A stretch of DNA of 32,000 nucleotides from Zygophlyctis sp. KS116. Its lineage: Eukaryota > Fungi > Chytridiomycota. Below, one piece after another: positions 25,385-31,432 of this stretch; the stretch's first letter is position 1; each line of letters starts with the position of its first letter. Made by a program: the position numbers and the translations under genes. The stretch spans positions 1 to 32,000 of the forward strand of contig BAAFSQ010000049.1 of the NCBI GenBank assembly GCA_054661495.1, read 5' to 3'. The notes under the pieces were generated by a model that saw only the letters and a list, made by a program, of their open reading frames with translations, searched no databases and was not told where the DNA came from.

Positions 25385-27261
<1,877 letters not shown>

Positions 27262-27281
27262 AGATGAGGAGTAAAATAAAG

Positions 27282-27378: not shown

Positions 27379-28538
27379 ATGCTATCCAGTCCAGTCATGA
27401 AATTGCTATATCTAGCACTCTTGAATATTCTTCTCGTCCATGCTGTTCCCTACGATAGGCCACGACATAAGCCGTTTGATGATTTAGAAATGGCAAATAA
27501 AGAAAATAAACCTCTGCATTCACTGCTCTCTAGGCGATCTGACTGTGCTATTGTTGTTGAAATATGGCAAAGTCTGGGAGGAAAAACTAGATTAAAACCT
27601 GAAAGTGTTGGGTATCATGGATGTTGTAATACATGGTATCATAAATCAGACATTCCAAATATTGTATGTTCTGGATCTAAAGTCAAAAAGATGTAAGTCT
27701 GAATAATTAATATAAAAAGTAATTGGATTTCTCAAAATCTTAAAGGGGATCTACCTCCTTCAATAAGTGAATTGGTACAATTGGAAGAACTGTATGATAC
27801 TTGTATTAAAACTAGATGGTTATCGTTTAATGAACTTTCAGGAAACATTCCAAAATCAGTTGGAGTTTTGACCAATCTAAAATGTTTGTAAGATTTCTTT
27901 CTATAACTCAATAGTATGTTGTCTTCTAATAATTTGACTGGAGAGATTCCAAAACAGGTTGGATACCTCAAGTCTTTACAATGGCTGTATTATAAACTCA
28001 ACTTAAATTAGAGCATTGAGAAATAACCAATTATCAGGTAGAATACCACCAGAGATTGTTTTATTAAAAGATTTGAAACATTTGTAAGAAGATTATAGGA
28101 TTAATATATAGGGATTTTTCATTTAATCAACTCTCTGGACGAATTCCAAGAGATATGAAACGGTTAACAAACTTGCGTGAGTTATGGTTAAGAAATAATC
28201 AATTAAACGGGACGATTCCTGCTGATTTAGGGAAATTAGAACAATTAGTTACACTTTCTCTCTCTTTTAATCAGTTTTCTGGAGAAATACCTAGGGAATT
28301 GGGAGAATTACATCAACTGTTGTGGTTGTAAGTTTAAAATAGATAACGATAGTGGATTTGTAAACAATAATATTTCTGGTACTATACCAGAGGAACTAGG
28401 TCAATTAAACCGATTAAGATCGCTGTAATGTCTTTTTATCTTACAAGTAGCGGTAAAAGTAATAATACGCTTCTGTCTGATACATTGCCTGCTAATCTGC
28501 AGGATAGAGCTGATAGAAGCTTTTTGTTTTTATATTGA
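27379..28538 (+). CDS. Secreted plant-type leucine-rich repeat protein A (signal peptide, Cys-rich N-cap, 8 LRRs), ~325 aa, 7 introns
   Basis: Signal peptide MKLLYLALLNILLVHA (the start could be this second ATG). 24-aa repeats LxxNxLSGxIPxxxxxLxxLxxL. Introns 27693-27719, 27792-27815, 27888-27914, 27987-28011, 28084-28111, 28328-28352 and 28425-28450. Confidence 0.9.
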
Positions 28539-28644
28539 TTGTTCTAATAGTTTTGTTGTTTTGAAAGTATTAATGCATTGAGTAAATTTTGTAATCGGGA
28601 CACTTCAAGCGTATAAATTAGCGGTAAAATAAGTTTTTGAACCA

Positions 28645-29413
28645 ATGTTTTTTTATTTTTTGGGAATTCTGAGCGTAGCCGCATCTGCAAAGGTGCATCG
28701 GATGAATAATAGGCTACCTGGTGATGTGGAAGAATGGGTCAATCAGATTAATGAGGCGGAAGAAACAAAAGATGAAATGTTCCATTCAAAAGTTGAGACT
28801 CGATCTGACTGTTCAATTGTTGTAACTCTTTGGAAGAAAATGGGGAAAGAAACGATTTTAGATCCTCAAAATGTAGCTCCAATGGGTTGTTGCAGCACCA
28901 ATAAGTATAATGATGTTGGCCATGTTGTGTGCAACGGAGAAAATGTTATTCAGATGTGAGTATTGTTTTCTGAATTCATTAGAGATTGGAGCTATAATCA
29001 TCTTCAAGGCGAAATTCCGCAAGAGATTGGTATGTTGGAACATGTCAAAGAATTGCGTCTTGCCGGTAATGAACTCGATGGATCAATTCCAGCATCAATC
29101 GGTGATTGTAAAAGCTTGATGTATCTGTATGAATTCTTGCATTTTAAAACGTAGAGATTTGGCTGATAACAAGCTTTCTGGTAATATTCCAAAAGAAATG
29201 GGGAAAATGGTAAATTTGGGATACCTGTTTTTCTGGAATAATAACCTTGAAGGAACTATACCTGATGCATTCGGTAATTTGATTAATTTGGTCTCATTGT
29301 AAATTGCATTTTCTAAATTTAGTGGCGTCGGTGGAAACTCTCTACTGTCTATTGATGTTCTACCTGAACCATTGCAAAAGCGTAAGGATGCTTGGAACTT
29401 GTGGATAACATAG
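28645..29413 (+). CDS. Secreted plant-type leucine-rich repeat protein B (paralog of A, 4 LRRs), ~229 aa, 3 introns
   Basis: Signal peptide MFFYFLGILSVAASA and the shared cap RSDC.IVV..W...G..T.L.P..V...GCC....VC.G. Repeats NxLxGxIP. Introns 28956-28982, 29127-29154 and 29299-29322. Confidence 0.9.
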
Positions 29414-29477: not shown

Positions 29478-31432
29478 TTATAGTGAAAATGGATAAAAGA
29501 TATCGTTGGGTAGAGGAGGTATTAAGCGTGGTGCAGGAGGAACTACAAGTGACGGATCCTCCGAAATTGGAACAAAAGATACAGTAGATTTAATACGGAA
29601 AAGCTGAGGTGTAGCACCAGGAGTGTTTGAACCACCGGTAATGAGATCTGATGGCTTTATACAATCTAATGCATTTAAACATCGGTATGAGATTGATCCA
29701 GAAGTATAAGAATAACGAGCCCCGACAATGCCTAACTGAGGATTTGATGTAGATCCAAATTTTGCTGTTAGAAATTCAATATTAAATTCCGTGAGGATCG
29801 ACGTACAAGTTCCAGCGAGAGGCTCTATGATAGGAACAGTTCCTGTCAATGAGTTTGGAACATCATTAATAATTGGAACCCAATCGTCAACATTTAAGAA
29901 ACTGGTATTGCCAAACTTCCCGACATGAGTAAGGGAGGAAGCTGTCAGAGTTTGAATATTAAAAATATCACGCCGAATCGCCCCGCAGTTGTTGATCATA
30001 TCAGCAAAATTGTATGAGAGCGTACAATAACTGTGCATTTCCTGCCCAAAAAGTACTGGAATGCGATGCGATTTGTCCGAAATTCCAGAGCACGTTACGC
30101 TTGTACCACCAGGAGCCACAAAATCAGCAGCCAAAGATAGACCATACAGAGGATCTGCATATTGCTGGATTGCGGATTGTTTATTATTGGTAGTAATAGT
30201 ACCAGCCAGTACAGGTTTACCTATGACGTATCCTGGACTTCCTGATTTAGAAATAGGAGAATTTGATGAGCCACTCTACTCAATAAATTTCAAGACAATA
30301 CCTTTACAAAGGAAATCCCAAACTTTAAAGCAGTCCCGGCGTAATTAGTTACTGGTATAGTCACCAATGTGGTATCAGCCACAATCGAATCTATAGAAAC
30401 AATTCCTGTAGATGCCACAGAATATTGCACAGTCCAAGATATTTGATGAACCGCATTATTGCATTTCGAATTTACAGCATCCCATGATGGAGAACTTTGA
30501 GCGCAACTAGTAGTTATTCCTGTTAATGGATCATAGCAAGTAGTAGACCCTTGTGTTATGCTTATCGAATCTGCAGATGATGAACTCTAGTATAAGTATT
30601 CTTGATAATACCTTTAAAACAGTAAAACCTACTGCATAATACATTGCATCAAGTTGAGTTCCTTGAGCACAAGAAGCTGCACCTGTACTAAAATAATAGA
30701 CACAAGAAGATGATTCACTAATTCCAAATTCTTAATCATAAATTTAAAGCTTCTTACTTGCATTAGAGTTTGGATTACATTCTCCAGAATCAGTAGGCCT
30801 TGGGAAGCCAAAAGCCCCACCCAAGCCAGCAGCAACATAAACAACCTTTATGGAATCTCCAGTCTTACAGTTAAAAATTAAAGAGATACCATATAATTTT
30901 GTGAATAAAGCAATACATTTTCTATTGAATTACTTTTAGATTCAATAGGAAAATCATTTAACGCATATTTACTCAAAAAATCAGAATCTTTTGTAAATAT
31001 TCCTGGATTTCCATAAAAAGTGCCCTTGATTGGTGAATTTGACAATAGAACACAAGTAGCTGAATCCACTCCATGTTTATATACGGACATCATTATACCA
31101 TTTCGGACATTCACAGACACGAGTTGATCCGAACAATAAGGAATTTGTGATGTATTTCCAGCGGATGATTCTAACAAGCAACCGCCTTTAAAAGTTTTCA
31201 AATCGCTAGAGGAGCAGTCCGAATCACAGCAACAGTTTGGATCACAGGAAAACCTAGTTAAATCGCAGATGCACTTTCCAAAATCTGCATTGTAATTTAG
31301 AATAGTGGATGCCGTCGCCACCTATTATCAATACAACATAATGTATACACTTGACCAATCTATAGAATACGGGGATGGAACAATTTGACCCCATACATTC
31401 GATATTACAAGGACCACTAGTCCGAATTTCAT
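29478..31432 (-). CDS. TCTN1: Tectonic (ciliary transition-zone protein, TCTN1-like), ~607 aa, 5 introns
   Basis: Signal peptide MKFGLVVLVISNVWG, CICDLTRFSCDPNCCCDSDC, SGSPGYVIGKP, PVLFG..M.SYC and C-terminal LPNDIFYPF. Introns 31322-31348, 30864-30889, 30731-30757, 30587-30611 and 30276-30301 give 608 codons. Confidence 0.9.

What the first reader, a model, noticed from the sequence alone, without database searches (positions are those of the whole stretch)
27379..29413. Tandem secreted plant-type LRR genes built from 72-nt exon modules: candidate diversifying recognition/effector system
Seen: all 10 introns of the two paralogs are phase 2 and fall at the same LRR register. Internal exons are exactly 72,72,72,72,216,72 nt in gene A and 144,144 nt in gene B. 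The two genes share N- and C-caps but carry 8 vs 4 repeats. Known: the LxxNxLSGxIP consensus is typical of plant extracellular LRR receptors and PGIP, and one-LRR-per-exon layouts occur in plant SERK/ERECTA genes and in brown-algal ROCO genes proposed to shuffle exons. Inference: any module can be skipped, duplicated or swapped in frame, making this a candidate combinatorial system for secreted immune-like binders or host-mimicking effectors in a zoosporic fungus.
Basis: partly seen in the sequence, partly recalled or inferred. Interest (0 to 1): 0.85.

Follow-up and report, generated by a model that had tools for sequence, protein, structure and literature searches.

The report
Two conserved secreted plant-type LRR genes
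Two neighbouring genes of a lake chytrid fungus encode small secreted leucine-rich-repeat binding proteins built from 72-base exons exactly as in plant receptor genes, but related strains and species keep them unchanged, so this pair is an ordinary conserved member of a known kind rather than a shuffling recognition system.

Summary
Gene A (27379-28540) has internal exons of 72, 72, 72, 72, 216 and 72 nt. Gene B (28645-29413) has internal exons of 144 and 144 nt. All 10 introns are 24-28 nt and phase 2, and each splits the codon of the first Leu of LxLxxN.

This layout is already published for plant LRR-kinase genes (PMC3050792) and for brown-algal ROCO genes. It also recurs in the annotated chytrid Globomyces pollinis-pini.

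The diversifying reading fails at this locus.
- A strain about 5% diverged keeps every intron, exon size and repeat number.
- dN/dS there is 0.12 (A) and 0.33 (B) over the repeats and tail, within the range of neighbouring genes.
- A species about 30% diverged keeps 8 collinear repeats in A and the same layout in B as far as its contig reaches.
- Binding-face residues change no faster than other variable residues.
- No module shows recent exchange.

RNA data were too thin to test splicing or exon skipping.

The wider family in this genome is large. A different cap subtype forms long one-exon-per-repeat arrays with recent tandem duplication and hypervariable binding-face positions. The scan had already found that family on other DNA of this genome (s1-560669, s1-558314).

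Verdict: a new member of a known kind, of modest interest.

The parts
27379..28540 (+). Gene A: 8 exons, 326 aa; signal peptide, pro-region, 4-Cys N-cap, 8 plant-type LRRs, Cys-free partial repeat and tail ...FLFLY
   Evidence: collinear ortholog in L050 (95% nt) and L055 (63% aa in the repeats)
27379..27444 (+). Gene A putative signal peptide (MLSSPVMKLLYLALLNILLVHA)
   Evidence: read from the sequence; no signal-peptide predictor was available
27445..27537 (+). Gene A linker/pro-region ending in RR just before SDC; the fastest-changing part of the gene (7 of 9 changes in the first 150 nt are non-synonymous)
   Evidence: cleavage at RR is inference
27538..27692 (+). Gene A N-cap (SDC..VV..W..LGG...GCC....C...V), end of exon 1
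   Evidence: no non-synonymous change against L050
27720..28083 (+). Gene A exons 2-5 (27720-27791, 27816-27887, 27915-27986, 28012-28083): one 72-nt exon per LRR, separated by introns of 24, 27 and 25 nt
28112..28327 (+). Gene A exon 6, 216 nt: three LRRs with no intron between them. The relative L055 has an intron between the first two.
28353..28424 (+). Gene A exon 7, 72 nt: LRR 8
28451..28540 (+). Gene A last exon: partial repeat and tail, stop TGA
   Evidence: tail conserved in L055 (...FLILY)
28645..29413 (+). Gene B: 4 exons, 229 aa; own signal peptide, pro-region, N-cap, 4 LRRs, partial repeat and tail ...NLWIT
   Evidence: orthologs in L050 and L055. Lake metatranscriptome contigs lie on exon 1 only, 28647-28952.
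28645..28689 (+). Gene B putative signal peptide (MFFYFLGILSVAASA); similar starts in orthologs P0014, P0015 and P0026
28690..28803 (+). Gene B acidic pro-region (LPGDVEEWVNQIN...SKVETR); one copy here, 2-4 tandem copies in orthologs from other samples
28804..28955 (+). Gene B N-cap, end of exon 1
28983..29126 (+). Gene B exon 2, 144 nt: LRR 1-2
29155..29298 (+). Gene B exon 3, 144 nt: LRR 3-4
29323..29413 (+). Gene B last exon: partial repeat, KR site and tail, stop TAG

Best explanation
These are two old, separately transcribed paralogs of a chytrid family of extracellular plant-type LRR proteins.

How each protein is built and works (the order of steps is inferred):
- It enters the secretory pathway through its own signal peptide (read from the sequence).
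- It probably loses a fast-evolving pro-region at the basic site just before SDC (inferred).
- It folds into a short curved solenoid, with 8 repeats in A and 4 in B. A 4-Cys helix-plus-strand cap closes the N-terminal end. This was modelled on a paralog, not on A or B.
- It binds a conserved extracellular partner on its concave sheet (inferred). B is about the size of a plant SERK/BAK1 co-receptor ectodomain.
- There is no membrane anchor, kinase or other domain.

The 72-nt exon design is inherited. The family grew by tandem duplication of one exon-plus-intron unit whose intron sits in phase 2 in the first Leu codon of LxLxxN. That is the same position as in plant LRR-kinase genes. A and B then lost some of these introns, which gives the 216- and 144-nt exons.

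At this locus the cassettes are frozen. Orthologs keep repeat number, order and binding-face residues under purifying selection.

The ligand is unknown. A conserved target on the substrate or host surface, or on the chytrid's own wall or receptors, fits best.
For: Gene models, phases and register.

Plant-type repeats:
- Pfam LRR_1 and LRR_4 match.
- All top solved-structure hits are plant LRR receptor kinases such as GSO1, FLS2 and PEPR1.
- A model of the paralog on C138 (cap plus 4 repeats, pLDDT 87.8) matches SERK1, BAK1, BIR3 and SOBIR1 ectodomains at TM 0.8-0.85.

Conservation:
- L050 is 95.3% identical over the locus and has identical exon sizes, introns and repeat numbers.
- dN/dS is 0.12 for A repeats plus tail and 0.33 for B. 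Flanking reading frames give 0.09-0.42.
- The 3 amino-acid changes within A's eight repeats are Leu/Val/Ile swaps (a fourth non-synonymous change lies in the tail), and none of the changes in A or B falls on an exposed strand position.
- L055 (63-65% aa identity) has 8 collinear repeats in A and the same 144 + 144 layout in B up to the contig end.
- 7 of the 11 comparable modules have their positional ortholog as the best nucleotide match, and 3 more have it as second best.

Separate genes: B has its own conserved signal peptide and A has a conserved stop and tail.

Inherited layout:
- Globomyces KAI8896052.1 has about 31 introns of 26-36 nt at the same register.
- Rice LRR-kinase introns 'split the first Leu ... 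of xxLxLxx with phase 2', with 72- and 144-nt exons (PMC3050792).
- Intron presence differs between the window and L055 while the 72-nt register is kept.
Against: - No RNA read crosses any intron, so splicing and constitutive use of all exons are inferred from comparison only.
- No signal-peptide predictor was run.
- The structure model is of a paralog. The joined A and B proteins were not folded or searched.
- Only two diverged relatives were available, and the L055 contig ends inside B's fourth repeat.
- The difference between binding-face and other variable positions is not significant (Fisher p = 0.07).
- The ligand and biological role are untested.
Confidence: 0.7

Rival explanations
1. 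First reader's reading. The pair is part of an active combinatorial system in which 72-nt cassettes are skipped, duplicated or swapped to make varied secreted binders. This could happen in the germline or by alternative splicing.
For: - All internal exons are symmetric.
- Elsewhere in the genome, arrays with another cap subtype show recent block duplication. Examples are C641 with a 4-module period at 0.87-0.91 identity, C13 modules 5 and 9 at 0.90, and a C488 gene duplicate at 0.99.
- The C543 array has hypervariable binding-face positions on a near-uniform scaffold: entropy 2.97 against 0.93.
- Those arrays sit on dozens of contigs and have no collinear counterpart in the GROS21 strain.
- Brown-algal ROCO genes with the same exon design are alternatively spliced (PMC11378527).
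Against: At this locus:
- Repeat number and order are constant across three lineages.
- Selection is purifying and the binding face is not accelerated.
- No module is more than 0.71 identical to any other.
- Three cassette boundaries have lost their introns.
- A and B carry a different cap subtype from the expanding arrays.
Confidence: 0.07
2. A and B are host-directed effectors that mimic the LRR ectodomains of algal or plant surface receptors, like the Zymoseptoria sLRR effector that binds BAK1.
For: - Both are secreted LRR-only proteins of SERK/BAK1-like fold and size.
- Secreted plant-like LRR proteins occur across fungi, including a chytrid, and some suppress plant immunity (bioRxiv 10.1101/2025.08.22.671746).
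- The cap family also occurs in Sanchytrium, an algal parasite.
Against: - The Globomyces representative tested in that preprint was among the nine candidates without ROS-suppressing activity.
- From my own knowledge, not a tool result, Globomyces and Gorgonomyces are saprobic chytrids, and both carry the cap family.
- Paralogs with the same cap are membrane proteins with a cytoplasmic SH3 domain, which points to the fungus's own signalling.
- Evolution is slow and purifying, unlike typical arms-race effectors.
- The lifestyle of this organism is not known to me.
Confidence: 0.15
3. The family, introns included, was acquired by horizontal transfer from a green alga or plant. This would explain the identical intron position and phase.
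For: - The intron position and phase are the same as in rice LRR-kinases.
- The closest solved structures are all from plants.
- The preprint notes a patchy fungal distribution, with most BLAST hits coming from plants.
Against: - The N-cap is a distinct 4-Cys variant. Pfam LRRNT_2 does not detect it.
- A profile of the cap finds only 134 representative proteins in 1.84 billion. Those checked for a name are chytrids or a sanchytrid; most hits were unnamed or not looked up.
- The same exon design exists in brown algae, so it may be ancient or may arise repeatedly.
- No phylogeny was built.
Confidence: 0.12

Closest known systems
Plant LRR receptor kinase / receptor-like protein ectodomains and PGIP (plant-specific LRR class), especially the small SERK/BAK1, BIR and SOBIR1 ectodomains
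   Same: - 24-residue LxLxxNxLSGxIPxxxGxLxxLxx repeats.
- An N-terminal helix plus Cys cap ahead of the first strand.
- Extracellular location.
- LRR introns in phase 2 in the first Leu codon of xxLxLxx, with 72- and 144-nt exons (PMC3050792).
- Fold match of a paralog at TM 0.8-0.85.
   Different: - No transmembrane helix or kinase.
- The cap has four Cys (DC...CC...C) and is not detected by Pfam LRRNT_2.
- No Cys-rich C-cap in A or B.
- Introns are only 24-28 nt.
- The host is a chytrid.
Fungal secreted LRR (sLRR) proteins such as ZtLRR of Zymoseptoria tritici and GppLRR of Globomyces pollinis-pini (bioRxiv 10.1101/2025.08.22.671746)
   Same: Signal peptide plus a single plant-like LRR domain with nothing else. 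The class is also present in a rhizophydialean chytrid, the group of the nearest named relatives of this genome.
   Different: I had no sLRR sequence, so direct homology to ZtLRR or GppLRR was not tested. No host or immune-suppressing role is shown here. The preprint does not discuss exon structure (no occurrence of 'intron').
Brown-algal ROCO / LRR genes with shuffled 72-bp phase-2 exons (PMC3341825, PMC11378527), and Tetrahymena LRR genes with 90-bp phase-2 exon arrays (PMC6564038)
   Same: One repeat per exon, all introns in phase 2, growth by tandem exon duplication. In this genome the array-type relatives behave the same way.
   Different: - Those proteins are intracellular and carry a GTPase (ROCO), or have a different repeat length (Tetrahymena).
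- A and B themselves show no shuffling, no variation in repeat number and no positive selection.
Globomyces pollinis-pini KAI8896052.1 (P0005) and Gorgonomyces haynaldii KAI8907413.1 / KAI8913509.1, all annotated as hypothetical proteins
   Same: The same 4-Cys cap. In the Globomyces gene, checked here, plant-type repeats are encoded one per exon, with tiny introns at the same register.
   Different: They are long chains, with six cap-matching stretches each in P0005, P0129 and P0132. In P0005 the units also carry Cys-rich C-caps. A and B are single units, each with its own signal peptide.

Membership tests
Plant-specific-type extracellular LRR proteins | Tandem 24-residue repeats with consensus LxxLxLxxNxLSGxIPxxLGxLxx | tested here: met
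   12 modules listed. Pfam LRR_1 E 2.6e-13 and LRR_4 E 4.3e-12 on exon 6. Top solved-structure hits are GSO1, FLS2 and PEPR1.
Plant-specific-type extracellular LRR proteins | N-terminal cap of the LRRNT_2 type (helix, then C.W.GV.C, then first strand) | tested here: inconclusive
   - Pfam LRRNT_2 is not detected in A, B, paralogs or homologs at E up to 0.1-1.
- The paralog's CC..GI.C...V..INW does align to the cap of plant GSO1, and its alignment to PEPR1 covers almost the whole sequence (residues 4-139).
- The model has the helix and matches plant ectodomains from their N-terminus.
Plant-specific-type extracellular LRR proteins | Secretory signal peptide | not testable with these tools
   Hydrophobic N-termini are visible in A and B and are conserved in orthologs. 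No predictor was available.
Plant-specific-type extracellular LRR proteins | LRR-region introns in phase 2 in the first Leu codon of xxLxLxx, with exons of 72 nt or multiples (as described for rice LRR-kinases) | tested here: met
   against PMC3050792.
Exon-shuffling diversifying LRR repertoire (brown-algal ROCO type) | Symmetric one-repeat exons | tested here: met
Exon-shuffling diversifying LRR repertoire (brown-algal ROCO type) | Recent duplication or exchange of LRR exons within or between genes | tested here: not met
   For A and B the best identity to any of 186 modules is 0.71 or less, and modules are collinear with those of L055. The feature is met only by other family members: C641, C13 and C488.
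Exon-shuffling diversifying LRR repertoire (brown-algal ROCO type) | Diversifying selection on concave-face residues | tested here: not met
   dN/dS 0.12 and 0.33. Concave x positions changed in 41% of cases against 56% for other x positions.
Exon-shuffling diversifying LRR repertoire (brown-algal ROCO type) | Alternative splicing that varies LRR content | tested here: inconclusive
   Only three short metatranscriptome contigs were found, all inside B exon 1, and none reaches a junction.
Fungal sLRR effectors (ZtLRR type) | Secreted protein consisting of a single plant-like LRR domain | tested here: met
   Secretion is inferred from the sequence.
Fungal sLRR effectors (ZtLRR type) | Binding to a host LRR co-receptor and suppression of host immunity | not testable with these tools
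   The host is unknown. The chytrid representative in the preprint was inactive in the plant assay.

The most novel reading that the evidence does not exclude
A and B are the conserved, fixed-length members of a large chytrid repertoire of cell-surface and secreted plant-type LRR proteins. The array-type members of that repertoire diversify by germline duplication of one-repeat exon cassettes. The small conserved members would serve as common partners for the variable ones, much as SERK-type co-receptors do in plants. In this reading the shared intron position with plant receptor genes reflects a single ancient LRR exon unit, older than the split of fungi and plants. That would give fungi a plant-like surface recognition system, which they have been thought to lack (PMC2939053).
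Probability: 0.15. Interest if true: 0.7.

Novelty: new member of a known kind. Interest (0 to 1): 0.3.

Why it matters
On its own the pair matters little. It adds two conserved secreted plant-type LRR genes to a class already reported in fungi, and its exon design is the textbook design of plant LRR receptor genes.

Three points have some wider value:
- A fungus with 25-nt introns keeps the very intron position and phase seen in plant LRR-kinases. This bears on how old this exon unit is.
- The pair is a slow-evolving internal control against which the fast-changing array-type relatives in the same genome can be judged.
- Relatives with the same cap include membrane proteins with an SH3 tail. 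This touches the question of whether early-diverging fungi have LRR surface receptors.

Tried and rejected
- An automatic spliced-ORF search first timed out. A dynamic-programming version then read through stops and fused A with B. I dropped it and used hand-set introns plus an LRR-module HMM. One search was an empty script.
- RNA: the four lake metatranscriptome runs held little of the stretch. Two gave nothing and two gave only short contigs inside B exon 1, so there is no splice or skipping evidence.
- The search for related loci in JGI metagenomes with A exon 1: 166 pattern matches, none confirmed.
- The search for homologous proteins with A exon 1 gave a single cluster, but its members led to the useful contigs L050 to L053.
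- I tried to compare an array gene (C543) between strains. The best GROS21 contig (L056) is only 81-87% identical, has a different 5' flank, and has no collinear counterpart anywhere in the genome. I therefore make no claim about allelic repeat-number variation there.
- Whether the third gene of L055 is the ortholog of the gene on C360 stayed open, because only the first module matches best.
- A single fused A-B gene (as in Globomyces) was considered and rejected. A has a conserved stop and tail, and B has its own conserved signal peptide.
- A ciliate-type genetic code was considered because of the 25-nt introns, and rejected. B ends in TAG, and the nearest named relatives are chytrids.
- Joined spliced proteins were not sent to any search or folding tool. 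Exons were searched by reference only, and joins were made only inside local scripts for translation and dN/dS.
Full report
**What is there**

The window is AT-rich (31-39% G+C) and its genes are densely packed. Reading 27379-29413 and removing short GT..AG introns gives two head-to-tail genes on the + strand, 104 nt apart.

Gene A has exons of 314, 72, 72, 72, 72, 216, 72 and 90 nt. Gene B has exons of 311, 144, 144 and 91 nt. The ten introns are 24-28 nt. The first exons are 2 mod 3 and all internal exons are multiples of 72, so every intron is phase 2.

When the proteins are cut into 24-residue modules at the exon boundaries, each intron falls in the codon of the first hydrophobic residue of LxLxxN.

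Each protein consists of the following parts:
- a hydrophobic N-terminus that looks like a signal peptide;
- a 31- or 38-residue linker, so that SDC begins at residue 54 in both;
- a cap, SDC..VV..W...G...CC......C...V;
- 8 (A) or 4 (B) repeats;
- a Cys-free partial repeat with a short hydrophobic tail.

**Are the introns real?**

RNA evidence is almost absent. Four lake metatranscriptome runs held small shares of the stretch, and only three short contigs could be laid. All three lie inside B exon 1 (28647-28952), and none reaches a junction.

The support is comparative instead:
- In a related contig (L055) every LRR exon remains an exact multiple of 72 nt, while three of the six shared introns differ in length by 1-2 nt.
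- Nine of the ten introns carry an in-frame stop if retained.
- Against a close strain, introns differ at 13 of 261 positions (about 5%). A's repeat exons differ at 12 of 576 (about 2%).

**What kind of repeat and cap**

Pfam sees only generic LRR models in the repeat exons and nothing in exon 1. Against solved structures, the three-repeat exon of A and a single-exon paralog (contig C138, locus L045) hit plant LRR receptor kinases first: GSO1, FLS2, PEPR1, ERL1 and SERK1. The paralog's cap aligns with the plant cap.

A model of that paralog (cap plus four repeats, pLDDT 87.8) matches the SERK1, BAK1, BIR3 and SOBIR1 ectodomains at TM 0.8-0.85. This was done on a paralog because the spliced A and B proteins have no reference. 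The joined step was left out of all search and folding tools.

Pfam LRRNT_2 does not detect the cap in any member. A profile of eleven caps from this genome finds only 134 representative proteins among 1.84 billion. The named ones are from Globomyces pollinis-pini, Gorgonomyces haynaldii and Sanchytrium tribonematis. The cap is therefore a chytrid-lineage variant of the plant-type cap, and the organism is a relative of rhizophydialean chytrids.

**Is the exon design special?**

No. Rice LRR-kinase genes are described in the same terms. [quoted passage not shown]

Brown-algal ROCO genes have 72-bp phase-2 LRR exons (PMC3341825, PMC11378527). Tetrahymena has arrays of 90-bp phase-2 LRR exons (PMC6564038).

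Mapping the annotated Globomyces protein KAI8896052.1 onto its DNA shows about 31 introns of 26-36 nt at the same register.

Within this genome, 27 sampled loci gave 186 modules. Of these, 132 are preceded by AG and 147 are followed by GT at the same position.

**Does this pair diversify?**

I found the locus in other samples through the exon-1 reading frame. Two contigs are identical to the window. One, from another lake metagenome (L050), is 95.3% identical over A-B, against 96.5-97.1% in the flanks.

L050 keeps all ten introns, all exon sizes and both repeat numbers. The Nei-Gojobori dN/dS values are:

| Region | dN/dS |
|---|---|
| Gene A, whole | 0.23 |
| Gene A, repeats plus tail | 0.12 |
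| Gene B, whole | 0.28 |
| Gene B, repeats plus tail | 0.33 |
| Five flanking reading frames | 0.09-0.42 |

dS is similar throughout, about 0.06. The 3 amino-acid changes within A's eight repeats are Leu/Val/Ile swaps at core positions. The four in B's repeats lie on the convex side, with one more in B's C-terminal partial repeat. Only the signal and pro-region of A approaches neutrality.

A more distant contig (L055, about 70% nt identity) carries an A ortholog, a third paralog and a B ortholog in that order.
- The A ortholog again has eight repeats and the same tail.
- B has the same 144 + 144 layout up to the end of the contig.
- Seven of the eleven comparable modules find their positional counterpart as the best nucleotide match, and three more find it as second best.
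- Across these orthologs, core positions changed in 16% of cases, concave-face variable positions in 41% and other variable positions in 56% (Fisher p = 0.07).

The binding face is therefore, if anything, more constrained. No module of A or B is more than 71% identical to any other module in the genome.

What does vary is intron presence. The intron between repeats 1 and 2 is absent in L055. An intron between repeats 5 and 6 is present there but absent here. This fits piecemeal intron loss from an all-intron ancestor.

Splice isoforms remain untested. Also, gene number in the tandem differs (two against three).

**The wider family**

The scan had met this family before on other pieces of the genome (s1-560669, s1-558314). 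My own checks agree in part.

A second cap subtype (PQCCWVVRSWQLMGK) heads long arrays of one-repeat exons on dozens of contigs, many of them short. These arrays show recent block duplications: C641 has a four-module period at 0.87-0.91 identity, C13 modules 5 and 9 are 0.90 identical, and C488 holds a gene duplicate at 0.99.

In the 16-module C543 array the concave positions have entropy 2.97, against 0.93 for other variable positions. Gene A shows no such contrast (2.21 against 2.07).

The best counterpart of C543 in the diverged strain is only 81-87% identical and is not collinear. I could not show that it is an allele.

A and B thus belong to a slower, cap-distinct subfamily of about a dozen loci. 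That subfamily includes a membrane form with an SH3 tail (P0053 and the paralog on C138).

**Most likely function**

A and B are soluble extracellular LRR binders with a conserved partner. A host-mimicking effector role, as for the Zymoseptoria sLRR that binds BAK1, is possible but less likely:
- The Globomyces member tested in that work was inactive.
- The cap family occurs in Globomyces and Gorgonomyces, which I know as saprobes; that is my own knowledge, not a tool result.
- The genes evolve slowly.

**Verdict**

It is a new member of a known kind, with interest 0.3.

Noticed in passing
L055:1-3197 (Logan contig of a related species): The A and B orthologs are separated by a third cap-plus-7-LRR gene that is absent between A and B in the window. 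The tandem therefore differs in gene number between relatives, although each gene keeps its own repeat number.
   Followed up: partly
window 28690-28803; P0014, P0015, P0026: The acidic pro-region of gene B (LP.DVEEWV.QIN...SK.E) is a single copy here. It is 2, 3 and 4 tandem copies in orthologs from other samples, some of them flanked by KKR sites. The repeat variation in B lies in the pro-region, not in the LRRs.
   Followed up: partly
window 27792-27815: Intron 2 of gene A is 24 nt and has no in-frame stop. If retained it would add 8 residues (YDTCIKTR plus the junction) instead of truncating the protein. The other nine introns carry stops.
   Followed up: no
L048:1375-1701 (G000 contig C73, minus strand): One open frame runs from the last LRR of an array straight into a second N-cap with no signal peptide. 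The same pattern is seen in Globomyces KAI8896052.1, whose protein has six stretches matching the cap profile. Multi-unit LRR chains therefore exist in this family.
   Followed up: partly
L045 (G000 contig C138) and P0053: A cap-bearing paralog has close homologs in lake metagenomes with the architecture cap, about 7 LRRs, a transmembrane helix and a C-terminal SH3 domain (SH3_9, E 1.5e-9). This is a receptor-like layout that I have not seen described for fungi.
   Followed up: partly
L036 (G000 contig C543), L033 (C641), L022 (C406), L019 (C488): Array-type relatives carry a different cap (PQCCWVVRSWQLMGK) and up to 16 near-uniform one-exon repeats with hypervariable concave positions. They lie on dozens of mostly short contigs, so the assembly probably breaks at these arrays.
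   Followed up: partly
L019 (G000 contig C488), open frame at region positions 3-686: The reading frame upstream of one array-type cap continues for about 150 residues of unrelated sequence (DNLYKLTVDGQTIPVDPKYGW...). This suggests an extra N-terminal domain fused to the LRR unit.
   Followed up: no
window 25500-27262 and 29478-30134: The neighbours are unrelated housekeeping genes. Upstream on the + strand is an AAA ATPase. Downstream on the - strand is a tectonic-like (TCTN/DUF1619) gene. Both identifications come from the Pfam tags on the orthologous contig L050. There is no sign of a functional cluster with the LRR pair.
   Followed up: no
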